Positions 6,345-55,111 of a DNA stretch of 64,000 nucleotides are shown here, piece by piece. The position numbers and the translations under genes are program-made. The DNA lies in assembly GCA_964252035.1 (NCBI GenBank), contig OZ176205.1. The stretch is one strand, 5' to 3'. The notes under the pieces are model-generated. The model did not search any database. It saw only the letters and a program-made list of their open reading frames with translations, and was not told the DNA's origin. The stretch comes from Podarcis erhardii. Taxonomy: Eukaryota. The stretch's first letter is position 1, and every line of letters begins with the position of its first letter.

Positions 6345-6523
6345 TTGGACAGTGGAACAGACTTCCTTGGGAGGTTGTGGACGCTCCTTCCTTGGAGGTT
6401 TTTAAGTGGAGGTTGGATGCCCATCTGTCATGGATGCTTTAGCTGAGATTCCTGCACTGCATGGGGTTGGGCTAGATGACCCTTGAGGGTCTCTTGCAAC
6501 TCTGCAGTTCTGTGAATCTATGA
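6345..6523 (+). mobile_element. CR1 LINE 3' fragment
   Basis: ggaggtttttaag...ggctagatgacccttgagggtctcttgcaactct...tctatga matches the CR1 3' UTR/tail pattern. Confidence 0.7.
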
Positions 6524-12186: not shown

Positions 12187-15100
12187 ATGTGCTGTGTGAT
12201 TGTTGTTGTTTTTTGTACAAGGCATCTATTCTGTAACCTGTAAAAGTAAAAGCAGACCTGTACTTGTCATTCCCTTTATTTTTAATAGTAAAATTATTGT
12301 GAGCTAACTGGTTTATAGTTCAGATGCCATTTATTCTGGCTCAATCCAATGTACGTTACTAGGACAGCTTTGGAGTAAATGGATTATGAACTGAAAAATT
12401 GGTCAGTACTTAATAGCTATTGTTAATAGTATATGTCCTTTTGATCAGAACCAGGAAAGGGAAATTGCTCCTTGTGCTAGTGTGGATAAAAAGGACCAGT
12501 ACCATGTATATGATTGGCCCAGGGATGCATGTAGAACAGTCGGTTTTTCTGATGTTTTGTACTGTCATTAAACTCGGGGGAAATTGGAATCCTATGTCTC
12601 TAATTAATTGAGTGATCTCAGTATAGCAGGAACATGCAATAGCTCTTCTGAAAGGGCATTATTTCTGTTAGAAAGCTTATCTTTGTACTCCTTTGAGGGG
12701 AGATGGTATTTCTGAGCTGGGTGTGAAAAGATAATTCAACGTGTAAAAAACCCTAAGCTTTATGCAACCCCTGCTAAATAGACTTTGTTAACCATGTTGC
12801 CAAACCCTTTTAGCCATGTAACAGATGCTGCAGCCTTCAGTCTAATAACTCATGACTTACAGACTTTCACTATCCAAAACCTGAATGGCAAGCCCAAAAT
12901 CATTGATTGATCTTAGTCCTTGCATAGTCCTAATTGCCTTCCTATCAGTACTGGCTCTGATATGGTCCTTTCCCTCTCACAACGTTTTGGGTACTTACGC
13001 AGTTCTGGAATTTCTCTACATTATTTATTTATTTTCTGTTTCCAAGTGTATGAACTGCCAAGTCATAGAAAAAAAATCATGGCAGTACAATAAAACAACA
13101 TAAAATGCAAATCAAATTACCAACAAGGAATCAAATAAATCATCTAAAAATGACTGGAGAAAGCAACTTTTATCGGTGGCAAATTATCAAAGTGGTAATT
13201 CTTGAAACAATGTTCCAGAGCACCTGTGCTGCTATGTTAAATGTTGGTTCCCGTAGAAACTTAATCTATGTCAGGAGGGCTTCAGAAGAGTGCTGTGATC
13301 TGGCCGGTTTATAAGGGATAAAGTGGTCATTTAGGTAACGTGGTAGATGTTTAGAAGCATTGGGGATGTGATGGTACCGTGAGAGACCCAATAGTAAAAA
13401 TGCCAGGGGTTTATAGTCCTCCAGAGTCATTCTCTGAAAGGTCCTGCAGAAAGGAACAGAACCAGTGAAGTAAAGTGCCACAAATCCCCACCCAACACTG
13501 TTGGTCCAAGTGGGTACCTTGATTGTTGTCAAAAAAGAGTGAGCTGCGGGGTCACACTCTCCTGTGATCAAGGTCATCCATCAGGACCACTAATGCTGAC
13601 TAGGTCCCAAAACAACCTGAAGCCAGACTGAGGTAGCTCAAGATTACATGTTTCACACCTGCGCTCAGTAAATTGGAGGATCAACATACTTCCCAGAAAT
13701 CTGAAAGGAATAAATATATGATATATAATTTGATAAAATAGCATCTTAAAAGCAAACTTCCTGTACTTGTCCAAGCATTAGAATACAAAAGAGCTGCCAA
13801 AAGTGCTTGATCTTGAGAAGCCATTCAGGTTGAACATCCTGCAATTTAGGGGATATCCTGAGGAAGTGGGAAACACTACACAAACTGCTGCACTAACTGA
13901 TAGAACCCACAATGTGGCACTGCCACCTAACATTAGGAAATATCCCCACAAGGCACTATATTAAAAGGACTTGATTTCCTAAGATTGCAGAGCATCAATT
14001 GAGATGGTGATATTCCAATACCTCCTATAGCTGGGATCCTCTCTTAAATTGATAGCGTCAAGTAAGGATTACTAGCAGACTTCTGGTTAATTCAAAGTAC
14101 ATTCTTCTGAGGCAGTCCCTTCACTTTATCCCCCTTGCCCTGCTTCCATGGGTGCCTCTAAGAGGACTGGCTGGAATGTGCTGGCACACACCCAAGACTT
14201 CTGTAGCTGTTTTCTATTTTCTGTGAGCTTTGTACCCAGGGCTGAGTGTTCTTTGGCTCTCCTTTCCTTCTGATTCTCCATGTTTGGTATCCTCACTTGC
14301 CGTCATACTAGTCTTTGCTGTGTTACACACCTGTGAAGGTAATAATAGGCATCTGGTGTATCACACAGACAAACAGAATTAACGGCTAGAAAAATTAGAG
14401 GGGAGCTAACAAAGGCAGTTGCTATTTCTTCTTGTGTACAAGGAGTAAGATTAGTGAGGATTAGGAATCAGAAGAGCTTCATACTTCTGTACCAAGAACA
14501 ATTGCCACATTGATCCTTGCATGTGGAGCGCACAACTTTTCAACATCATTATGATATTGGCAGATAACACTGTAGATTATGGATGTAGAAATCTAGCTTA
14601 CCACACCTCCCAAGCACGTGAAGATAAGCAGGATAAGAACTGGTGCCACAAAACCTGGAGATTAATCATGATGCTTTTTAAAATTATATGTTGTAAGCTG
14701 TTCTTAAAACTTTTTTTGTAGGTGTGGGATTTAAAATTGCAGAAAGTTGCCATTAAAGTTGCAGCAACCCATACCTAAAACAAAAATAAAATATTTAGAT
14801 GTGCTGGAGAAGACTGTTCTTATTTTTAGGAAATGGCCTGTTGAGTTTTGAGCTCACAGCTAGTTTTCAAATGTACTTTCATGCAAAAATAGAATCATAT
14901 ACATTAGAGTGAAGTAATTATTCTTACTGTATTTTATGAAGCTCTACCAATATTTTGTAGAAGCTATACAATATAAAACCTACATATTCATGAGAAGACT
15001 TCTGAGTTGTCGGTAGAAATATTGTTTAAAATGATAATTTGAAATAATTTCTTAAACTTTTCTGAGCTCCTCATTATAAAATGAATATCATTGTAAACCA

Positions 15101-15804
15101 GAAGCATACAGCTTTGAATGAATTATTTGATAATTGAGTTTTATACTTGGGAATTACATGTGAGGACTCTTATTTATACAACAGATGGTGAAAGATTCAA
15201 AGCACAATCCCATGCATTCGTATCCAAAAGAAAATCCTAGTGATTTCAGTGTGCATGTAAGATTTTAAACTGTAATCAGTATGTATAAGATTGCAAACTT
15301 AAAGAATACTCAAACATGGCCTATCTATAGGGAATGACTCTTAAATAAGTTTTAGAAACTCATTAGCATGTTGGATTTTATATTGTATCACTTATGTAAA
15401 CACTTCTGAATACTATATGAACATAACATTCCAATGGAAGCAATTACTCTACATGCGTAAACTTTAAATGTGCCAGACCATTTTCTATAAACGAGTTTCT
15501 ACTGCACTGTTAGACATTTTAATTGAATAATGAAGCCAGTTAAGAAAACCCCTCTGAATTGGCTAGATAGGCCTTTGTTTCTTTTTACTTCACTGCCCAA
15601 CAGGGGAAAGTGGATTGGGCAGGGAAAGGGTAGTTAAGAGGCATTAAAGCATATTTACCCCTCAGCTGCCTCCTCCGTTGCTGATTAAAGTCTAATGCTG
15701 TCCCACTTTTGAGGCTTCCAACAGAAGTACTACATCTCCTAAATGCAGCCCATAGTGTGAATTCCATGGAGAAATAGACATGGACACAGCCTCTCCTTCC
15801 CTCT

Positions 15805-15809
<5 letters not shown>

Positions 15810-15850
<41 letters not shown>

Positions 15851-15868
15851 CACACACACACACACACC
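15810..15868 (+). repeat. (CT)n(CA)n compound microsatellite
   Basis: Read directly. Confidence 0.9.
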
Positions 15869-16514
15869 CCATTCTGCTTTTCATTCTTTCACTGATCCCT
15901 CAGATGAACAGGGTTAAAGGGCCTCTAGAGCAAATGACAATGTTAAGTAGAAGATAAAAAAGCTGTACAGATGTTTACACAACCTCATGGTCCTTGGTGC
16001 TAGTCAAGTAAGAGACAAGCCTATGGGTGCAAATGCAGGGGGAATTGTAAACAGAGGAAGGAGGACTGTTCCTCACAGACTGTAGCCTAGCAAATTTTAT
16101 CACTCCTTTCTCTGTGTGCTATACTACCCACCCTGTAGACTTGTGTAGGTTTGATTTTTAAGGCAAATAATCAGAAGGGTAAGAGGATCCAAACCCTCCT
16201 TCCACTCAGTACTTAATTTTCCATAGTTCCCTGCCAAAACGCTTCTCATCCAGTCAAAGTCACTTCCGGTATCCATGGAGAAAAATTATTGGAGGGGAAG
16301 ATGTTAACATCAATAATATTGTTACTGCTTCCCTCTGGAGAGCTTTAACAATAAAAATCTGTGGGAAAGACTTTGCTGTTCTACCAGTTCTACCCTAAAT
16401 GCTAAGGCTCCTTTAACTGAGTATCTATTTGATTTGATTCTGTAATCAGGCAGTCAAACAAAACCCTAATGCGATTTAGTACCAAGGCAAAATACATGTA
16501 ATACTAAAAATAGT

Positions 16515-16632
16515 TTTATTATTTGCACCCCACCCATCTGACTGGGTTGCCCCAGCCACTCTGGGCTGCTTCCAACATATATAAAAACATAATTAAACAT
16601 TACAAAACTTCCCTATGCAGGGTGGCCTTCAT
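16515..16632 (-). mobile_element. L2 LINE 3' fragment
   Basis: ccccacccatctgactgggttgccccagccactctggg, same family as 47150-47590. Confidence 0.65.
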
Positions 16633-19145
16633 ATGTCTTCTTTTTCCATTTGCAATGGGATTGCATCCTCCACCATGCCTGAGGGCAGCAGGGGAGGCTG
16701 TGTGACACAGGCAATTCTCTTCCAACATCTTGCCTCCACTTTTATCCCCCTAGCATCTACCACCTGAGGTGGCTGCTTCACTCTGCCCAATGGTAGGGCC
16801 AGCCTTGTCCATCAAAAAGAGACTACGCCTGCAATGCTATAGCCACATACTTGGCAGTAAGTGCCATAGAACTCAAATGAGGCTTTATTCTGAGTAGGCA
16901 TTAACAGGCAAACTATAAGAGATTTTCTGGCTGCTGCAATCAGAGAGGCCAGTTTAAAGAGGATCTTTAGCAAATATTTGACCTGCATGTTAGATGAGAT
17001 TAGCATTAAACATGATAATAATAGTCTTGCTCCAGTTTTGCTGTGAACCTGTGGACTCTGCTGCAAATGTAAGCAAACAGGAGATGACGCAAAGGAGTTT
17101 AGTTTGGATAATGGGAGCTGTGGGCTGGGGCAGAGGGCATCAGGAAAGCTGGATCAGAGCCCAAGGCCAGCATTAGGTAGGAATGTTGTTGTCCTAAGCA
17201 AAACATAATTTTGACCAACTTTTTTAAGCACTGGTACTACTGAAGATTTTTTCTTTGGTAATTAATCATATGTAATACTGTACATAGAAATAAAGGGAAG
17301 AGATTGTAAATATAACTGGAATGTTAAAAAAACCAAAATAAGCCAGCCATATAATTACTTTGGTTGGTACAAAACTATCAGCAAGAAAATATTCTCTTAA
17401 CAATTAAATTATGACCTAGCTGTTGTAGATTGGGCCTCTACAGATTTCTGGGGGGCAGGGATGGTTTCAGCTAGGTATGTACATAAGTAGGAAATGAACT
17501 AAAGGAACATAAAAAGGGAACGGAACAGCATGTGGGAAGGACAGCTAAATCTTTCCATGTCAGTTGGGCAAGTAATCAAATATTACACCAGATCATAGCA
17601 GGTACCATACGGCTGCACGGTGGGGTGGGGATATTGTTTTTGTTTGTTACTACGTTATGTATTGTGGAGAGCAAGATTGCTAAGAACATTAAACTAGTTG
17701 TTAAGCAACTAAGGCTGCAAGTTGAATCACAGTTGCGAGCATTTTATTTAGAGTCCATTGTGCTGGTTATGCCCTGGGTGAAGGCGATTACTTATATAAC
17801 ATATTACCAAAAGCTATAAATTATGTTATAGCTCTAATACATGTATGTTAAGAGTAGCCAGCATGTACAGATATCAGGAGAGTTTTGATATACACAAGGG
17901 GATAAATAAATCTGCAGTAAGTATGCTGTTTACACCAAAGGTGGGTTGTTAACTATAAGCACCTGACAGCCTAATGCCCTTTTATTGCTTTGCAGAATTT
18001 CAAAGGCTGCCTTCTTCCACAAGAACCTCCTGAACTACTAATATTATACCAGGAGGCCCTTCTTCAGATCTCCCCACTTTCAGGGACTCTGATTGGGTCT
18101 TTCCAGCTATACTGCCCTATCTTTCCTAGAAAAGCTTGCCTGACACCAGCAGCAAGCCTAATGAATATCTGGGGCCAGGTGAAGAACTGTTTTATTTCCC
18201 CAAAACTTTAAGGTATTGTGTTTTAAATATTATTTTAATCTCATTCTTTCTACTGCTACTGTTCTGTGCTGCTTTTTTTGTATGTATTGTTATTGTTTTT
18301 TTCTTTAACCAGCTAACACATAAGGGCACACACCCTGGGCTGTCATGGAATCTTATGATGTTAAGTGTATCCTATACTAACTAGGGTTACTTTGGAATAA
18401 ACAGATTATAGGTGGATACATATCAGCATTAACAATACAATAAAGACAGATTACACCCTCCCGTAAATATTTGTAGCAGTAGCTTCCTAAAACTGAGATG
18501 TGGAGGACTTGTACAGTGTGCACCCATTCACTGACCTTCAACAAATAACAGGAACCTGGACTATTCTCAATAAGGACTGCTTAGTATGCCATAAATGCAG
18601 ATAACCTATGGGGCATCTCTTAAATGTTGAAGGTGAATACGTGTTCTACAATGCTGGGTACTGTCTGAAATAAATGACACCATTTGTACATTAAGGTATT
18701 GTGAGGAAAGACTTCAAACATTTCAGAGAATTTATTTCCAACATTCTTCCCCAGAAACAGTTATACTACTTTTAATCAGCAAGCAGTGCATCCCTTTCCA
18801 TGAATTTTCCTGATAAATGACATTTTCTTCCCTTGTTCAGCTCTCATAGCACTGACAAACTCAACTCTCAACTCAGACTTCTCTGTCTTTCATACCTCTT
18901 ATCAACATACCTGTAAACTTGGCTAATTCTGCCTCACCACTTTCATTCCTACAGCCCGCAAATGTTCTTTACTTCCAGCAACACAACAAATGTCATTTTA
19001 CAAGCTAGTAATTTGTGTGCATGGACTTTAATGTACAAAATCTTGAGCCCCAGGCTCAAAGTCAGCCTTCTCTGCCACAGTCAGTCACCCTCCTGCTAAT
19101 ACCAGTTCTGATCCCCATCCTTCCATCTCCAAGGACATGCTTTTA

Positions 19146-19203
19146 TGTACAGTGTCAGCATGTGGTGACAGAAAGTTTACATCACATGCTTCATTAAGTG
19201 CAG
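19146..19203 (-). promoter_or_regulatory. SECIS element in the SELENOP2 3' UTR
   Basis: Minus strand ttaATGAagcatgtgatgtAAActttctgtcaccacatgcTGAc: AUGA/GA quartet, agcatgtg/cacatgct helix, AAA 12 nt after AUGA. Confidence 0.88.
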
Positions 19204-19692
19204 AAAAGCAGGAAATGCAAAAATGGGGTCAAAATTGGCTTCTCAAGAAGCAGCTCTGTGTTCCTGAGGAAAACAAGATGGCTTCCTTAAGGCAGTCCTC
19301 ACCACAGAAATGGGATGTATCTAAAAATCCATCTGAGCCCAAGAGGAACACCACCTTAAGGCTTGGTGGAATAAAACTGGTGGATATGAGGTTAACTGGG
19401 AGACAGATTCAAAATGAGGATAGAGGTCTCATTGTGGACAAGCAGTTAAACTTTCCAATCACATATATGACACTACAAAAGTTTGTGTTGTGTCCTCTGC
19501 TATCTGTTGAGAGACCTTGAACGTCTAGGGAGTGGAACATTCACTTCCCTTCCCCTGCTGAAAACCGAGCCATCATATTTCTTCCTTCTGATGCATGTAA
19601 GTTTGCCCCCTGGCTCTTCTTAAAAGCTTGCTTAGTGCTAAGTATGCTTATGGCTAACAGTTGGGTGTTGCACACATTGAAGTTTAAATGTT

Positions 19693-19944
19693 TTATGGGG
19701 ATTCCCTTGTTTGATGCTTCTGTGAGCGATTCTGAGAGTGGAGAACTGGCTGGTGTGTACTGCTCAAACCCAAGGCTTTATGGTTGCCGACTCCTCCATG
19801 ATATGAATAGTGATGGGCTGTGTGCTTGGTGTTAGGTGCTTCTTGGCTTGGCTCATCATGATGGTACCTGGGGTCTTCCAGGTGCTTCTCTTTCTGTCCA
19901 GATGCCTCAGTTGTCGTCATGTTAGTACTTGCTGTCTTATTCAC
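19693..19944 (-). CDS. SELENOP2: SELENOP2 terminal coding exon (His-rich tail, no Sec-rich domain)
   Basis: Acceptor cttcacag|GTG in phase 0; VNKTASTNMTT...HHDEP...HTAHHYSYHGG...RESP*. Confidence 0.85.
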   Translation of the reverse strand: MNKTASTNMTTTEASGQKEKHLEDPRYHHDEPSQEAPNTKHTAHHYSYHGGVGNHKALGLSSTHQPVLHSQNRSQKHQTRESP

Positions 19945-21424
19945 CTGTGAAGGTAATGAAAGATTCTATATATGTACATGCAGATGGGCTTAGGGTGAAG
20001 ACAGAAACACATTTTTAAAAGTGAAGATGGATGTATATATCTGAAGTGATCTGCATTCAGCCCTTTTTGACAAAATATGTAAACTTCCAAAATAAACTGA
20101 GCTCAGAGCAACTGCTACTTTCTGTTTTCAGGAGAAATTGGCTGTGAAGAATGGTGATTGCCTGGCAGTCACTTAAAAAGTGGTTTTAAAGAATGTGTAA
20201 AATAGAAGTTTAAATGAGTAAACATGCTGGATGTTTAGGCGTAGAAATGGTTTTTAAAAGCCCAAAGTTTGAGAGGCAAAAAGCTGCACAGGAGTTTAAG
20301 TCAAATATATATATCTCTCAAAAGAGCGGGGAGGAAAGAAGGTTTGATTTCTCCAGATCAGAAAAACCTGCACCCGCTCCTGGAAGGAGATCTGTTTGAC
20401 TTCACTCTCGGTATGGTCGAAATGGCTTAAAAGGTATTTATAATATTTTGCTGCATTGGCTATCAGGACAGCAAAAAACTAAAATAGGTAATACATCAGC
20501 CCCCCCCCCCCCCCCGCAATCCCACCTTGAGGAATGAACTTTCAGGTCACTGATGGGGCAGGAAGTGACACCACAGGAGAAGACAGCAGTTACTATTTCT
20601 TCTGTCCAAGGAACAATATGCTCCCATTCATTGAGAACAGGAAGCACTTCAACCTGACAAATTAAGGCTGTTAATTTCTTTTTTTTCAATAACTGAGGGC
20701 AGACTATGGCTACTGGGTGAGGCTCAAGCAGTACATGATGGCAGAAGATCCAGGTCTTGACCCACCATGTACAAAACAGGAAGGTGGGGTTGACTTTAGA
20801 GATAAGGGGTGCCTGGGTGAGAGGAACCAAACCTTTCCTGCACTTGATGCCACACAGCTTCTGTTCCAAAGTGTTTTTCTTTCTGTTCCAAAGTGTTTTT
20901 CTTCTTGGGGTTGGACTCGATGGCCCTTGTGGTCTCTTCCAACTCTATGATTCTATGATTCTTCAAGTCAATCTCACTTTTAGTATCTGAACTCAACTAG
21001 GGAGAAAAGCACTTGGGGGAGGGCAAGCACTTGGGGGAGTGTGAGAAGCTGAAAGTGGGGGGGGGGAGTTTAGCATTTCCTCCCACCTGGGTTCTCCTGG
21101 ACCCCTCCACGCTACACTATCTGTGACTGTGGCAGACCTGGTGTCTCCATCTGCAATTTGCTTCTGAGGTTTTTATTTCAAGATGGTTTACTTCCTGTCA
21201 AGATGAAAGATGCTTTGTGGTATCTCAACATCCTTGCTTGTTGTAGCGGCCCAATATAATAAAACCCTCCCTTCCACCTTCTCCTCCCACATCCCTGCTG
21301 TAAGACCAATCTGATCAGAAACCTAGAATTCCCAGGCAGAAATTCAGGATGGGCAAATGAGGAAACGTCTGGCTTAAACAAAACGAGTTGAAAAGGAAGT
21401 TGATGAGGGGATTCAAGTCCCTAC

Positions 21425-21563
21425 CTCCTGGCTGCTGTTAGAGGGGTACCAGGAACAATTGCCGCAGTAGTCTTTGCTGTGTGTGTACCGCACGGCTGCT
21501 TCAACATAGGGCAAGTGCAGAAAACTGTATGGCAGCTGGATGTGGAAAGCCAGCCTGCTGCAC
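21425..21563 (-). CDS. SELENOP2: SELENOP2 coding exon 3
   Basis: CSRLAFHIQLPYSFLHLPYVEAAVRYTHSKDYCGNCSWY, homologous to SELENOP CGRLVYHLGLPFSFL...CGNCS. Confidence 0.93.
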
Positions 21564-22176
21564 CTGCAAAGCCCGAGAGCCATGAAACAAATGGACATAA
21601 AGTTAGTGTCAGGAGAGCATGTAATCCACTAATTTACACTGGAAATGAATCTAACCTGGCCTGAAGAATCTGGTTTTCCTCACCAACAGTTGTGAGGCAT
21701 GATGGTAAAGAGAAACACTTACATCATGGTATGTCCTTTCTTTCCAGATGTGTCCTCAAACAGACTTTTTGATAATGTATTCAGGAATCCCGAATTCCAT
21801 ATATCTTACTTTCCTTCCTTCTGCCCAGGCCTGCAGACCCCCATTGGCCTCCCATCAGCAGCTGCCTATGGAGCACCCACTTCTGTCCCCACTAGTGCTG
21901 CTGATGGGATCCCTACTGGTGGCAGCAGGGGCTTTCAGTAGCCAAGGAAGGAGCTGGACTGAGCCGCCTTGCAGTCCATTGGATCCTGAGATGGTCCCAC
22001 TGCCAGAACTGGGCTTCTTCCAGGCTCAATTGCTGCACCAGCTCCAAGCTGGCTCAGTGATCTGCCTTCCCTCCCTTCTGCCCCGGCTGCTATGCACAGC
22101 AGTGGCCCTGACTCTCCAAAAACCCTAATCAGTCTTGGGTGGGTGGGGAGTTAGAATTGCTCCCTTAAGCACTGAC

Positions 22177-22389
22177 CTGTCATAGATCAGGAAGTCATCC
22201 TTGTCCCCATCTAGAATTTGCCAGACGTCAGGCTCCAGAATCTGCTGCTGGTAAACAGGAACTCCCTCTGGGGCATGCCGTTTGAGCTCCCAGTACATAG
22301 CCCTGGAGAAAGGAGTCTTCTCATTCACAATCATGAAGCTGACATTGGTCACTCCTTCAAGTGACAGCTTCCTCTGCAAGCTGCCAAGG
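22177..22389 (-). CDS. SELENOP2: SELENOP2 coding exon 2 (213 nt)
   Basis: LGSLQRKLSLEGVTNVSFMIVNEK...VPVYQQ...DVWQILDGDKDDFLIYDR; same size as the SELENOP exon. Confidence 0.95.
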
Positions 22390-23025
22390 CTGGTGGGTAG
22401 GAAGAACAAGCAACGTTTAGGAATTGCGGTGCACAGATATAGGTTCCAGCCCTTGCCCTCTACACATACCATGTGGGATATGAGCCTGCACTGCTGGACG
22501 GAGGCCCCTTCATTTATCAGTTCACTGGACTTGCCATTACAGCGGTCCCTGCTACATAGATCCAGCAATAAGTTAAATGATACATATTATGCTTGAGCTG
22601 TAATTCACCAGGAAAATTGGATCTACCTTCTATATGTGTGTTATATCTGGCCTGCTGCAGCCCAGGCCTCAATTTTTGATTGCTGAACTGGAGCTTATAG
22701 ACAATCAGTTCAGTTCTGTGTTTCCTGATAGAAAGCCTAGGGGCAAAGATGTGACCTTAAGAGTTGTGATATTGCCACTGAACACCAAATACAGGGTTCC
22801 AACACATATCTGACTTTCTAGTCACATCCAGACCATCTTTTTAAAGCATGCGACTTTCCCCAAAGCATTATGGGAACTGTGATTTACCCCCTGGCAGAGC
22901 TACAGTTCCCAGCACTCTTAAACGACAGTTCCCATGACTCTTTGGGGAAAGCCATGTGCGTCAAATGTATGGTGTGGCTGCGACCTAACAGCTCCTGACT
23001 CAGGCAATCTTCTCTATGAACTCAC

Positions 23026-23240
23026 CTGGCAGCCTGCTTGAGACAGAACTGTCAGCTGGCTTTCAACAGTGCCACCACTGTCACTTGGCCCTCCATCCCA
23101 GCCATGGGGGCCACCCCATTGATCTTCCAGAGTGGTGCAGGCTGGCATATTCGGGTCCTGTTCTCAGCCACATCTGCCAGCGTAGCAGCAATTGCCAGGA
23201 GCAGCAGCAAGGTTGTTGTGGCTAGGGCTGAATAGCCCAT
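23026..23240 (-). CDS. SELENOP2: Selenoprotein Pb (SELENOP2) coding exon 1; CDS complement(join(19693..19944,21425..21563,22177..22389,23026..23240)), 272 aa, Sec63
   Basis: ATG 23240, signal peptide, VTVVALLKAS-UGA(23054-23052)-QFC = UxxC; frame continues to donor AG|GTGAGT; acceptor at 23261. Confidence 0.93.
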
Positions 23241-30399: not shown

Positions 30400-30891
30400 G
30401 TGAGGAATCAAAGACACACGGCAGATAAGCTTTCAATCAGGAGGCCTGAGGCAAGATCTAAAGGGGGAAGAGAGGGAGAGGATAGACTCTGAAACTAGGC
30501 AGAGAGACAAGGAGAAACGTGCAGATTTCTGGGGGAGGGGCAGATTCCTGGATTCCTTTGATTTTTCAGGCACACGTCAGCCGAAGGGAGATGGCATAGA
30601 GCTGCCTCCTCCTCCTCCTGCCCCCCCTACAAAACCTGGAGGCACTAACAGAACAGGCCCCTGTTCCCATCCAGGGAAGGGACCACTAGGGTCATCTAGC
30701 CCAACCCCCTCTGTAATGCAGGGAACATTTGCCTAACCTGGGACTCGAACTCATGAGCCCGTGATTAAGAGTCTTGTGCTCTACCCACTGAGCTTCCCCA
30801 CCCCACAACAACTGAGCTGGCTTTCTTTTCTGTTTCTGTAGGTCTAGCAGCAAAAGTTGTGTTACCATTGACCACCCTTTCAAACTGCATA

Positions 30892-32094
30892 ATGCCTGGT
30901 CTTCTGAACCGGATGTGCCACATTGGGTTCCACGTCCCTGAGGGGCAACAGCTGGCCAGCAACTTGGTGCGCCAGTTTGGATTCGAGCTGTTTGCTGCAC
31001 GGATGGCAGAATGGAGCAGGCAGATGGCCTTCCGGAGAGGGGATGCCGTTTTTCTCGTCAATGAAAGGCTGAAGTCTGCCAAGAGAGACGCTCCACCTGT
31101 GCCATCTTCAGGCTGCCTCAAGGATAAAGGAATTCTGTACGACGTGGACCTAGAATACGCCGTCAGTACAGCCTCCAACATTTGCTTTGAGGCAGAAGAT
31201 GTACCTGGCATCTCCCAAAGCCTACAGGAACGAGGATGCCAGATTCTCATCCCTCCCACAGCCGTGGGAGATGAAAATGGCCACGTCACTTATTCAGTAG
31301 TGGGATCCATCATAGGCAACATCAGCCACACACTGCTTGACAGATCTCGGTACAGTGGACCGTTCCTGCCTGGTTTCCACATGGTGGAGGGTGCTCCCAA
31401 GGTCCAGGTGGGTGGCCAGGTGACACATTTTGACCATATCACCTATGCTTGCCCCCAAGGTAGCTCGCAAGCTGTGTTGGACTGGTACAAGAACTGTTTG
31501 GGATTCCAGCGCTTCCCCATCCACCAGCAAGACAACGGTACTGATGGTTATGCAATCCAGGGTGCTGGTATGGGTCTTCGTCTTACTGCCATGCAGTCCA
31601 ATGGGAGCGATTCGACTCAGCTTCGCAATGACTGTAAAATTATTCTAGCTGAGTCTTTGTCAGAGCAAAAGAAGAACCAGGTGGATACTTTCTTAGAGCA
31701 GCACGGTGGATCGGGCATCCAACACGTGGCACTCTACACCACAGGTATTATAGGGGCCGCTGCGGCCATGGCCAGATCTGGCGCAAACTTTTTCAAGCCC
31801 CCCTTATCATACTACAGTGAGAAAAGGAAGGTGGAGGAGATAAGGCAAGCTGGGCAAAATCTTCAGCTCCTGAAGGACCACGGTATCCTTTTGGATGCTG
31901 GCGTAGGAGGCAACGGTGGCTCTGGAGGCCTTTGTGAGAAGCAATACCTCATGCAGATCTTCACAAAGCCTCTCTTTACAGAGGATACTTTCTTCCTGGA
32001 GCTTATAGAGCGATGTGGGGCCACAGGGTTTGGCGAGGGAAACATTCGTGCTCTCTGGCAGTCTGTACAAAACTATATGGACCAGCAAGTTTGA
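30892..32094 (+). CDS. HPDL: 4-hydroxyphenylpyruvate dioxygenase-like protein, 400 aa, uninterrupted CDS
   Basis: MPGLLNRMCHIGFHVP..; Fe ligands FDHIT, IQHVA, FLELI; C-terminus GATGFGEGNIRALWQSVQ; first ATG is 30892. Confidence 0.96.
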   Translation: MPGLLNRMCHIGFHVPEGQQLASNLVRQFGFELFAARMAEWSRQMAFRRGDAVFLVNERLKSAKRDAPPVPSSGCLKDKGILYDVDLEYAVSTASNICFEAEDVPGISQSLQERGCQILIPPTAVGDENGHVTYSVVGSIIGNISHTLLDRSRYSGPFLPGFHMVEGAPKVQVGGQVTHFDHITYACPQGSSQAVLDWYKNCLGFQRFPIHQQDNGTDGYAIQGAGMGLRLTAMQSNGSDSTQLRNDCKIILAESLSEQKKNQVDTFLEQHGGSGIQHVALYTTGIIGAAAAMARSGANFFKPPLSYYSEKRKVEEIRQAGQNLQLLKDHGILLDAGVGGNGGSGGLCEKQYLMQIFTKPLFTEDTFFLELIERCGATGFGEGNIRALWQSVQNYMDQQV

Positions 32095-35799: not shown

Positions 35800-36001
35800 G
35801 AGCTCAGTAGACAGAGGGGCGAGATGCTGTTCCCTGTGGAAAGCCCTCCCTTCAGATGTCAAGAAGATAAAGAAGTACAAAACTTTTAGAAGACATCTGA
35901 AGGCAGCCCTGTATTGGGAGGTTTCTAACACTTGATGTTTTTAGATATGCTGTAAGCCACCCAGAGTGGCTGGGGAAACCCAGCCAGATGGGCAGGGAAT
36001 A

Positions 36002-36047
<46 letters not shown>
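35800..36047 (+). mobile_element. L2 LINE 3' end with (AAT)n tail
   Basis: ccttcagatgtcaag...agacatctgaaggcagccctg...cccagccagatggg followed by (aat)n. Confidence 0.75.
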
Positions 36048-47149: not shown

Positions 47150-47192
<43 letters not shown>

Positions 47193-47590
47193 TTATTATT
47201 TATACCCCGCCCATCTGGCTGGGCCTCCCCAGCCACTCTGGGCGGCTTCCATAAAAACCAAAAATACAGTAAGATATCACACGTTAAAAACTTCCCTGAA
47301 CAGGGCTGCCTTAAGATGTCTTCTGAATGTCAAGTAGTTGTTTATCGCTTTGACATCTGCTGGAAGGGCGTTCCACAGGGCGGGCGCCACTACCGAGAAG
47401 GCCCTCTGCCTGGTTCCCTGTAGCTTTGCTTCTCGCAATGAGGGAACCGCCAGAAGGCCCTTGGCGCTGGACCTCAGCGTCCGGGCAGAATGATGGGGGT
47501 GGAGACGCTCCTTCAGGTATACTGGACCGAGGCCGTTTAGGGCTTTAAAGGTCAGCACCAACACTTTGAATTGTGCTCGGAAACGTACTG
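47150..47590 (-). mobile_element. L2 LINE 3' fragment (RT C-terminus) with (AAT)n tail
   Basis: FRAQFKVLVLTFKALNGLGPVYLKERL...RAFSVVAPALWNALP; typical L2 ORF2 end. Confidence 0.88.
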
Positions 47591-54334: not shown

Positions 54335-55111
54335 GCCTATGGCTGGTGCCCAGATGGATTGAAGTGTTCACAGTCTCACAACATTGACCTAATAATTAAT
54401 GAAGATGAGAACCACAAAGAGGACAAGCGGAAGAAAAGAAAGCAGAAGTGGAAGCATCGGAAGAATTTTGTAGAGCCCTCAAAGGAACCTGTGTTGAGAA
54501 GCCCTGAGAAGGAAGGAGAGGCGGCTTGCAATATGGAAGACGGTCCCCCATCCAAGCAGTCCTGTTTAAGCAACATGGTTGCTCCTACTGTAGATTCTGC
54601 AGGCACAGAAACTGTATCCAGTAATGAGGAGAGTTCTATGGATGTGGAACGAGAACTAGGCTCTGACACGACAACTGATACCAAGATGGATGAGGAACAA
54701 GCCAGTGCCACAGACAATGAGGGCATCACTTTATCACCATCCAAAGATGGGCCACAACAAAGGGCAGCAGGGACTGAAGGATCAGGACCAGAAGTCCAGA
54801 TAGAGTGTGCTTCTGTAGTGACGGCTTTGTCTGGCACCCAGAACCCAGTGGCACCAGTGCCTGGCTGTTCAGAGGGTGGTATTCACCGGGCTGGCTTTGA
54901 TGCCTTCATGACAGGTTACATTATTGCCTACGTCCATATGCTCAAAAATGATGAACACAAAGACTCAAGTGAAGGGCCTTGGTTGCCGGACTGCCATAAC
55001 AAAGTGTACCTCAGTGGGAAGTCTGTCCCCCTTCAGATAGTGAAAAGTTTGTTTTCTAAATCCTCCAAAGCTCACAGCCAGAAGATGAAATTGGCTTGGG
55101 CTAGTAAGTAG
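54335..55111 (+). CDS. TOE1: TOE1 last exon (C3H zinc finger end, basic NLS, final DEDD Asp)
   Basis: AYGWCPDGLKCSQSH, KRKKRKQKWKHRK, HRAGFDAFMTGY, HNKVYLSGK, KMKLAWASK*. Confidence 0.96.
   Translation, partial: AYGWCPDGLKCSQSHNIDLIINEDENHKEDKRKKRKQKWKHRKNFVEPSKEPVLRSPEKEGEAACNMEDGPPSKQSCLSNMVAPTVDSAGTETVSSNEESSMDVERELGSDTTTDTKMDEEQASATDNEGITLSPSKDGPQQRAAGTEGSGPEVQIECASVVTALSGTQNPVAPVPGCSEGGIHRAGFDAFMTGYIIAYVHMLKNDEHKDSSEGPWLPDCHNKVYLSGKSVPLQIVKSLFSKSSKAHSQKMKLAWASK

What the first reader, a model, noticed from the sequence alone, without database searches (positions are those of the whole stretch)
14050..18180. Hidden tandem SELENOP2 pseudogene with all four coding exons in order
Seen by eye on the minus strand. 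Exon-1 remnant about 18180-17963: TGGCC..TATTCA..CTTGCTGCTG..CTGGAAAGACCCAAT..AAGGCAGC..TGA..TTCTG..AGGCTGTCAG|GT, ATG lost. Weak exon-2 remnant about 17075-16862. Exon-3 copy from 14606: same 39-codon length to SWY, KDQCGNCSWY conserved, TAA at 14551-14549 plus TGAs, donor lost. Terminal exon copy from 14330 (VCNTAKTSMTASE vs VNKTASTNMTTTE). No SECIS-like hairpin was found below it. None of this shows in the ORF track. Inference: an old SELENOP2 duplication that decayed, a birth-and-death event in a selenoprotein family already lost in placental mammals.
Basis: partly seen in the sequence, partly recalled or inferred. Interest (0 to 1): 0.7.

Follow-up and report, generated by a model that had tools for sequence, protein, structure and literature searches.

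The report
Truncated SELENOP2 pseudogene: exons 3-4 only
About 5 kb downstream of an intact single-selenocysteine SELENOP2 gene lies a real but dead and incomplete old copy of only its last two coding exons, an ordinary piece of gene-duplication debris; the claimed remnants of the first two exons are not supported.

Summary
The finding is half right. A decayed copy of SELENOP2 coding exons 3 and 4 really lies on the minus strand at 14621-14141. It has the same orientation as the intact gene (CDS 23240-19693).

- **Support for exons 3 and 4:** nhmmer gives E 9e-8 for each exon, and tblastn gives E 4e-5 for exon 3. Smith-Waterman scores are twice the best of about 1,150 null windows. The hits are collinear, and they include an intronic piece and an identical 16-nt acceptor context, so this is an unprocessed DNA-level duplicate.
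- **Why it is dead:** it carries TAA and TGA stops, frameshifting indels, an intron shrunk from 1,480 to about 150 nt, no detectable 3'UTR homology and no SECIS-like hairpin.
- **Claimed exon 2 remnant (17075-16862):** it scores like random sequence in every test.
- **Claimed exon 1 remnant (18180-17963):** blastn, tblastn, strict Smith-Waterman and nhmmer (E up to 100) find nothing. Only cheap-gap end-to-end alignment ranks it in the top 0.2-2% of windows, and that does not survive correction for the region searched.
- **Power:** simulations show exons 1-2, decayed like exons 3-4, would be detected more than 90% of the time.

So this is a truncated 3' pseudogene fragment, not a four-exon copy. 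It is old (synonymous divergence about 0.6) and of modest interest.

The parts
14607..14621 (-). Remnant of the 3' end of intron 2 in the pseudogene; the acceptor AG is retained (cttgggAG|G)
   Evidence: blastn 21578-21537 ~ 14621-14580; splice contexts printed
14485..14606 (-). Pseudo-exon 3. It runs 39 codons to SWY (14605-14489) and keeps the CGNCSWY motif. Stops are TAA 14551-14549, TGA 14548-14546 and TGA 14542-14540, with internal indels of +4, -1 and -3 nt. A possible residual donor GT sits at 14484-14483
   Evidence: nhmmer E 8.7e-8; tblastn E 3.8e-5; Smith-Waterman 69 against null maximum 34; alignments
14331..14484 (-). Shrunken remnant of intron 3, about 150 nt against 1,480 nt in the parent. 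A conserved piece at 14451-14415 matches parent 20620-20586, and the acceptor context ATTACCTTCACAG|GTG is identical to the parent's
   Evidence: blastn 83% over 30 nt, E 0.027, collinear; tile scores 40 against control maximum 33-34
14141..14330 (-). Pseudo-exon 4. The first 13 codons are recognisable (VCNTAKTSMTASE). There follow deletions and a frameshift, a TAG at 14216-14214 in the entry frame, and a second recognisable block KSWVCASTFQPVL in another frame (about 14200-14162)
   Evidence: nhmmer E 8.5e-8 for 14337-14141; blastn E 7e-10 and 0.008; Smith-Waterman 62 against null maximum 32
17963..18180 (-). Claimed exon-1 remnant: not supported, marginal at best
   Evidence: Local Smith-Waterman 22 against null mean 21. 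No blastn, tblastn or nhmmer hit. Cheap-gap alignment gives p 0.002-0.02 uncorrected. The same stretch also attracts intron-2 tiles
16862..17075 (-). Claimed exon-2 remnant: not supported
   Evidence: p 0.38 in local and end-to-end tests; nothing by nhmmer, tblastn or Pfam
19693..23240 (-). Parent gene, intact SELENOP2/SelPb CDS. Exon 1 is 23240-23026 (Sec TGA 23054-23052, in S-U-Q-F-C), exon 2 is 22389-22177, exon 3 is 21563-21425 and exon 4 is 19944-19693
   Evidence: Translations; Pfam SelP_N on exons 1-3 with E 5e-9, 2e-24 and 1e-14
19138..19210 (-). SECIS element of the parent gene. It has AUGA 19194-19191, an 8-bp helix II, an apical AAA and GA 19156-19155
   Evidence: Pattern-and-fold scan; fold -20.3 kcal/mol with helix I, internal loop and helix II

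Best explanation
The stretch 14621-14141 (minus strand) is a truncated, unprocessed pseudogene fragment of the neighbouring SELENOP2 (SelPb) gene. It holds decayed copies of coding exons 3 and 4, with what is left of intron 3 between them. It has the same orientation as the parent and lies about 5 kb downstream of the parent's stop codon.

The most likely origin is a local tandem DNA duplication, from unequal crossing-over or replication slippage. The upstream edge of the duplicated segment lay in intron 2, just before exon 3, so the downstream copy never had a promoter, the signal peptide, the Sec-containing UxxC exon or exon 2. The copy then drifted neutrally.

It does nothing today. It has three in-frame stops and frameshifting indels in exon 3, a frameshift and stop in exon 4, no SECIS and no detectable 3'UTR.

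**Shown:** the homology, the collinearity, the retained intron and splice contexts, the disabling lesions, and the absence of detectable exons 1-2.

**Inferred:** the mechanism (partial duplication rather than later deletion of the 5' half), the age (order of 10^8 years) and the lack of transcription.
For: - **Collinear same-strand blastn hits:** 21578-21537 ~ 14621-14580; 21507-21446 ~ 14546-14489 (74%, E 6e-4); 20612-20586 ~ 14444-14415 (83%); 19957-19905 ~ 14343-14291 (83%, E 7e-10); 19778-19741 ~ 14200-14162 (79%).
- **Other search methods:** nhmmer E 8.7e-8 for exon 3 and 8.5e-8 for exon 4; tblastn exon 3 E 3.8e-5.
- **Null comparisons:** Smith-Waterman scores of 69 and 62 against null maxima of 34 and 32 over about 1,150 windows. 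A tile scan of the whole parent locus finds above-control matches only for exon 3, one intron-3 piece and exon 4.
- **Lesions:** stops and frameshifts are visible.
- **Exons 1-2 absent from 14.6-18.65 kb:**. Power to detect them at the observed decay is at least 0.93.
- **No sign the copy was ever under selection:** dN/dS is 0.55 over 37 alignable codons, not different from 1 (p 0.19). This is the value expected for one constrained and one neutral lineage. dS is about 0.6.
- **No SECIS:** none is found downstream, while the same scan finds the parent's SECIS.
- **Local origin:** SelPa and SelPb lie at separate loci (PMC6301783), so the copy derives from the adjacent SelPb gene.
Against: - The claimed exon-1 stretch ranks in the top 0.2-2% of null windows under cheap-gap or end-to-end scoring. 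It lies where a full-length tandem copy could start, so a complete duplication followed by heavier decay of the 5' half is not excluded.
- Homology to sequence that is neutral in both copies (introns, UTR) is beyond detection at this age. The true edges of the duplicated segment therefore cannot be mapped.
- No RNA run was available, so the lack of transcription is only inferred.
Confidence: 0.8

Rival explanations
1. A complete four-exon SELENOP2 duplicate was born by tandem duplication and then decayed in place. Exon 1 survives at 18180-17963 and exon 2 at 17075-16862.
For: - Under permissive gap costs the exon-1 stretch is unusual. End-to-end score is 20.5 against a null mean of 1.2 and sd 7.2, with 4 of 1,928 windows as good.
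- 0-1 of 1,000 dinucleotide shuffles reach that score.
- It is the top local hit under the 1/-1/-2/-0.5 scheme.
- Both halves of exon 1 pick this place as their best hit in the 7.6-kb target, and they do so collinearly.
- The position, just downstream of the parent's 3' end, fits a whole-gene tandem copy.
Against: - No hit at all by blastn, tblastn, Smith-Waterman at ordinary gap costs (p 0.39) or nhmmer at E up to 100.
After allowing for that, the best p values become about 0.03 to more than 0.5.
- The same 17.9-18.2 kb stretch is also the best hit of unrelated intron-2 tiles. This points to a local composition effect in an AT-rich region.
- Exon 2 is the best-conserved exon (Pfam 87 bits) and has no signal anywhere.
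- Simulated decay as severe as in exons 3-4 leaves exons 1-2 detectable in at least 93% of trials.
Confidence: 0.13
2. The pseudo-exons are used. They would serve as alternative terminal exons of read-through SELENOP2 transcripts, or as part of a non-coding RNA, which would explain the intact acceptor at 14331/14330.
For: The 16-nt acceptor context of pseudo-exon 4 is identical to the parent's, the acceptor AG of pseudo-exon 3 is kept, and a GT is available at 14484-14483.
Against: - All frames are closed by stops.
- Overall identity is only about 72% with many indels.
- Codon-level divergence is compatible with neutrality.
- No RNA evidence could be obtained: no listed run is on record as RNA.
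- A 16-nt identical run within a segment that is 83% identical over 53 nt is not remarkable.
Confidence: 0.04
3. The resemblance is due to chance or low complexity, and there is no duplication at all.
For: None beyond the short length of the matches.
Against: - E values reach down to 1e-7 to 1e-10 within a 64-kb search space.
- Five collinear same-strand segments match.
- Scores are double the best of more than 1,100 real-sequence null windows.
Confidence: 0.01

Closest known systems
SELENOP2 / SelPb, the adjacent parent gene at 23240-19693 (single-Sec paralogue of selenoprotein P; vertebrate-wide, lost in placental mammals; PMC3316567, bioRxiv 10.1101/2025.05.29.656587)
   Same: Exon 3 and exon 4 sequence, exon order and strand, the exon-4 acceptor context, one intron-3 piece, and the CGNCSWY motif.
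   Different: The copy has no exon 1 (signal peptide and U-x-x-C) and no exon 2. It has no SECIS and no recognisable 3'UTR. It carries stops and frameshifts, and its intron 3 is ten times shorter.
Salmonid SelPb2 paralogues (PMC6301783)
   Same: They are lineage-specific extra copies of SelPb whose 3' part has been structurally damaged by a lost penultimate exon and ORF shifts.
   Different: They arose by whole-genome duplication on another chromosome. They keep the 5' Sec-encoding exons and are expressed. The copy here is a local tandem fragment that keeps only the 3' exons and is dead.
Truncated unprocessed (duplicated) pseudogenes in tandem gene clusters (general knowledge)
   Same: The copy is adjacent to its parent in the same orientation, retains intron remnants and splice sites, and has accumulated stops and indels.
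   Different: Nothing essential; this is a typical example.

Membership tests
Functional SELENOP2/SelPb selenoprotein gene | SelP_N thioredoxin-like domain encoded by coding exons 1-3 | tested here: not met
   Parent exons match Pfam SelP_N. The stop-free pieces of the copy give no Pfam hit, and none of 72 pieces from 14640-18650 matches SelP_N. The profile scan has low power on such short pieces, but homology to exon 3 is shown by other means.
Functional SELENOP2/SelPb selenoprotein gene | In-frame UGA (Sec) in a U-x-x-C motif in the first coding exon | tested here: not met
   No supported exon-1 homologue exists. The parent has S-U-Q-F-C at 23054-23052.
Functional SELENOP2/SelPb selenoprotein gene | SECIS element in the 3'UTR | tested here: not met
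   The pattern-and-fold scan finds the parent's SECIS at 19193-19155 but nothing on the minus strand below 19000. Rfam missed both, so it is uninformative. SECISearch3 was not available.
Functional SELENOP2/SelPb selenoprotein gene | Open reading frame across the exons | tested here: not met
   TAA 14551-14549, TGA 14548-14546, TGA 14542-14540, TAG 14216-14214 and frameshifting indels.
Unprocessed (DNA-duplicated) pseudogene | Homology to a parent gene that extends into introns and splice sites | tested here: met
   An intron-3 piece at 14451-14415 and the acceptor contexts of exons 3 and 4 are retained.
Unprocessed (DNA-duplicated) pseudogene | Disabling mutations and no sign of constraint | tested here: met
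   Stops and frameshifts as listed above. dN/dS is 0.55 for the pair, p 0.19 against neutrality, over 37 codons only.
Processed (retrotransposed) pseudogene | Exons fused without introns, poly(A) tail and target-site duplications | tested here: not met
   About 150 nt of intron-derived sequence with the parent's acceptor lies between the two exon copies.

The most novel reading that the evidence does not exclude
The fragment is the last trace of a once complete, and for a time functional, second SELENOP2 gene. That gene would have arisen by tandem duplication deep in squamate history and may still be intact in other squamate lineages. This would be a reptile-specific expansion of a selenoprotein family for which only the salmonid duplication is on record.
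Probability: 0.12. Interest if true: 0.4.

Novelty: new member of a known kind. Interest (0 to 1): 0.2.

Why it matters
The value is small but real for annotation. Selenoprotein pipelines and gene counters should not report a second SELENOP2 here, and this locus should not be cited as a four-exon relic.

For selenoproteome evolution, it records that SELENOP2 underwent at least a partial local duplication in a reptile lineage. The vertebrate surveys I found mention lineage-specific SELENOP2 duplication only in Salmonidae (bioRxiv 10.1101/2025.05.29.656587). Beyond that it is ordinary duplication debris without function.

Tried and rejected
- **Rfam scan of 10-24 kb at E up to 10:** no SECIS hit even for the intact gene, so it says nothing about the pseudogene. 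I replaced it with my own pattern-and-fold scan.
- **First two SECIS candidates picked by eye (19590-19505, 19490-19400):** they did not fold as SECIS.
- **Pfam on 72 stop-free pieces of 14640-18650:** no SelP_N match. The true pseudo-exon pieces also fail Pfam, so this negative has little weight.
- **tblastn hit of the signal-peptide part of exon 1 at 17701-17588 (E 0.12):** a hydrophobic low-complexity match, not at the claimed place. Rejected.
- **Cheap-gap tile hit of parent intron 3 (20320-19991) to 13418-13110:** not collinear and not seen by nhmmer. Rejected.
- **Tile hit 20925-20776 to 16260-16177:** not collinear, with control scores as high. I read it as a repeat fragment.
- **Idea that the copy might derive from SELENOP1 lying in tandem:** rejected. 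The two paralogues sit at different loci (PMC6301783), and no other SelP_N exon is in the window.
- **Read laying on four relatives:** it gave no contigs on the pseudo-exons. The tool warns that a hole proves nothing, so I drew no conclusion.
Whole-protein searches for a second copy in other squamates (search for homologous proteins, cluster and contig look-ups) were left out for that reason.
  - I did not use the large representative search, because the family was already clear from Pfam.
Full report
**Parent gene**

On the minus strand the window holds an intact four-coding-exon gene. Exon 1 is 23240-23026, exon 2 is 22389-22177, exon 3 is 21563-21425 and exon 4 is 19944-19693.
- Exons 1-3 match Pfam SelP_N, with E 5e-9, 2e-24 and 1e-14.
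- Exon 1 has an in-frame TGA at 23054-23052 in the motif S-U-Q-F-C.
- The last exon is short, His-rich and has no further TGA, as expected for single-Sec SELENOP2/SelPb.
- My pattern-and-fold scan finds a SECIS at about 19210-19138, with AUGA, an 8-bp helix II, an apical AAA and GA. Rfam did not report it.
- Neighbouring ORFs with a glyoxalase domain (30859-32094) and a CAF1-like match (54359-55111) look like HPDL and TOE1 (the names are my inference). This fits the published synteny of the SelPb locus with human chromosome 1, separate from the SelPa locus (PMC6301783).
I agree.

I never joined the exons into one protein. All searches were done exon by exon, and exon 1 was split at the TGA.

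**What is really at 14-14.6 kb**

Comparing 12.0-18.65 kb with 18.65-23.4 kb by blastn gives five collinear, same-strand matches.

| Parent | Copy | Identity | E value | Region |
|---|---|---|---|---|
| 21578-21537 | 14621-14580 | 74% | 0.32 | intron 2 end into exon 3 |
| 21507-21446 | 14546-14489 | 74% | 6e-4 | exon 3 |
| 20612-20586 | 14444-14415 | 83% | 0.027 | inside intron 3 |
| 19957-19905 | 14343-14291 | 83% | 7e-10 | intron 3 end into exon 4 |
| 19778-19741 | 14200-14162 | 79% | 0.008 | exon 4 |

Other methods agree.
- nhmmer gives E 8.7e-8 for exon 3 (14610-14489) and 8.5e-8 for exon 4 (14337-14141).
- tblastn with the exon-3 peptide gives E 3.8e-5.
- Local Smith-Waterman scores are 69 and 62. 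The best of about 1,150 null windows taken from the rest of the window on both strands scores 34 and 32.
- A tile scan of the entire parent locus finds above-control matches only for exon 3, one intron-3 piece and exon 4.

The exon-3 copy starts at 14606, KDQCGNCSWY is kept, TAA sits at 14551-14549 with TGAs at 14548-14546 and 14542-14540, and the exon-4 copy starts at 14330 with VCNTAKTSMTASE.

I make two corrections.
- The equal 39-codon length results from compensating indels of +4, -1 and -3 nt, so the middle of the exon is frameshifted.
- A GT at 14484-14483 can be aligned with the parent's donor, so the donor is not clearly lost.

Pseudo-exon 4 has deletions, a frameshift and a TAG at 14216-14214. 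Intron 3 is about 150 nt against 1,480 nt in the parent, and the acceptor context ATTACCTTCACAG|GTG is identical. Retained intron sequence means this is a DNA-level (unprocessed) duplicate, not a retrocopy.

**Claimed exon 2 (17075-16862)**

This stretch has no support. Local and end-to-end scores both sit in the middle of the null distribution (p 0.38). There is no nhmmer hit at E up to 100, and no tblastn or Pfam signal. No other place between 14.6 and 18.65 kb scores above controls.

**Claimed exon 1 (18180-17963)**

This case is less clean.
- blastn, tblastn, Smith-Waterman at ordinary gap costs (22 against a null mean of 21; p 0.39) and nhmmer at E up to 100 all find nothing.
- With cheap gaps, an end-to-end alignment scores 20.5 against a null mean of 1.2 and sd 7.2. 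Four of 1,928 windows do as well, and 0-1 of 1,000 shuffles do.
- Across eight scoring schemes the per-window p ranges from below 0.001 to 0.28.
- The same 17.9-18.2 kb stretch is also the best target for unrelated intron-2 tiles. That suggests a locally GC-richer patch in an AT-rich region attracts GC-rich queries.

I rate the exon-1 remnant as about one in five to be real.

**Power**

I simulated decay of each parent exon at 28-40% substitution with indels. At 35-40%, the simulated scores for exons 3 and 4 (median 48-114) come closest to the observed 62-73. At that level, exons 1 and 2 remain detectable in at least 93% of trials. Their absence is therefore informative: they were deleted or never copied.

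**Age and selection**

Over the 37 codons that align without frameshift, dS is about 0.61, dN is 0.33 and dN/dS is 0.55. This is not significantly below 1 (p 0.19). It is what one expects when one lineage (the parent) is constrained and the other drifts. There is no evidence that the copy was ever functional.

A dS of 0.6 implies that sequence neutral in both copies is beyond alignment. That explains why only exons, their splice flanks and one intron piece are recognisable, and why the edges of the duplication cannot be mapped.

With generic vertebrate neutral rates of 1-2e-9 per site per year (my assumption), the duplication is of the order of 10^8 years old, with wide error.

**Downstream of the copy**

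There is no homology to the parent's 3'UTR and no SECIS-like hairpin on the minus strand below 19 kb. The scan yields 8 candidates in 128 kb, one of which is the true parent SECIS. Exons 3-4 contain no Sec codon in any case, so the fragment has no selenoprotein features of its own.

**Relatives and RNA**

Runs of the same species hold 92-99% of the sampled words of 14000-19950. Five other organism labels hold 29-61%.

Contigs of four of those relatives cover 16587-19950 at about 97-99% identity, but nothing was laid on 14000-14994. The tool states that such holes prove nothing, and the word shares suggest that part of 14.0-16.5 kb is present. I draw no conclusion from this.

No run is on record as RNA, so transcription is untested.

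**Literature**

SelPb is an ancestral vertebrate selenoprotein lost in placentals (PMC3316567). A recent vertebrate-wide survey reports lineage-specific SELENOP2 duplication only in Salmonidae (bioRxiv 10.1101/2025.05.29.656587). I found no mention of a reptile SELENOP2 duplicate or pseudogene.

**Verdict**

This is a real but truncated unprocessed pseudogene fragment holding exons 3-4 only. The most economical origin is a partial tandem duplication whose upstream edge lay just before exon 3. A full duplication with later loss of the 5' half remains possible (about 13%). It is ordinary genomic debris, useful mainly as an annotation caveat and as a small data point for SELENOP2 evolution.

Noticed in passing
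window 19138-19210 (-): The intact SELENOP2 gene's SECIS element (AUGA 19194-19191, helix II, apical AAA, GA 19156-19155) is not reported by Rfam at E up to 10. Rfam silence on SECIS in this genome should not be read as absence.
   Followed up: yes
window 30859-32094 (+): A single long ORF of 411 codons from a GTG has a Glyoxalase/dioxygenase domain (Pfam E 3e-7). It looks like the intronless HPDL gene, which fits synteny with human 1p34.
   Followed up: partly
window 54359-55111 (+): An ORF has a weak CAF1-ribonuclease match (20.6 bits, below the Pfam cut-off). It may be an exon of a TOE1-like gene.
   Followed up: no
window 16499-16641, 35888-36009, 47177-47324: A SINE-like repeat is present in three copies in the window (75-79% identity). 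Summed contig depth over it is in the hundreds of thousands in three related organisms (about 12,000 in a fourth), and contigs of all four break there.
   Followed up: partly
window 20897-20964 (-) and 6453-6521 (-): A shared repeat fragment (nhmmer E 1.5e-6) lies inside intron 3 of the parent gene. Such insertions may account for part of the tenfold size difference between the parent's intron 3 and the pseudogene's.
   Followed up: no
window 14000-14994: No contig of four related organisms was laid here, although 16587-19950 is covered at 97-99% identity in all four. This could be a filter artefact or a real structural difference; it is unresolved.
   Followed up: partly
window 18198-18375: In one related organism (run X17) these 176 bases are replaced by 413 other letters. 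This is an indel or insertion difference just downstream of the SELENOP2 3' end.
   Followed up: no
window 16535-19946 and beyond: Run X17 holds only 98 million letters, yet it has a 4.3-kb contig at depth 109 spanning part of intron 3, exon 4, the 3'UTR and 2 kb of intergenic DNA. This looks like targeted capture of this locus rather than RNA or shotgun data.
   Followed up: no
window 15800-15876: A compound (GT)n(GA)n microsatellite is present, and relatives' contigs break here.
   Followed up: no
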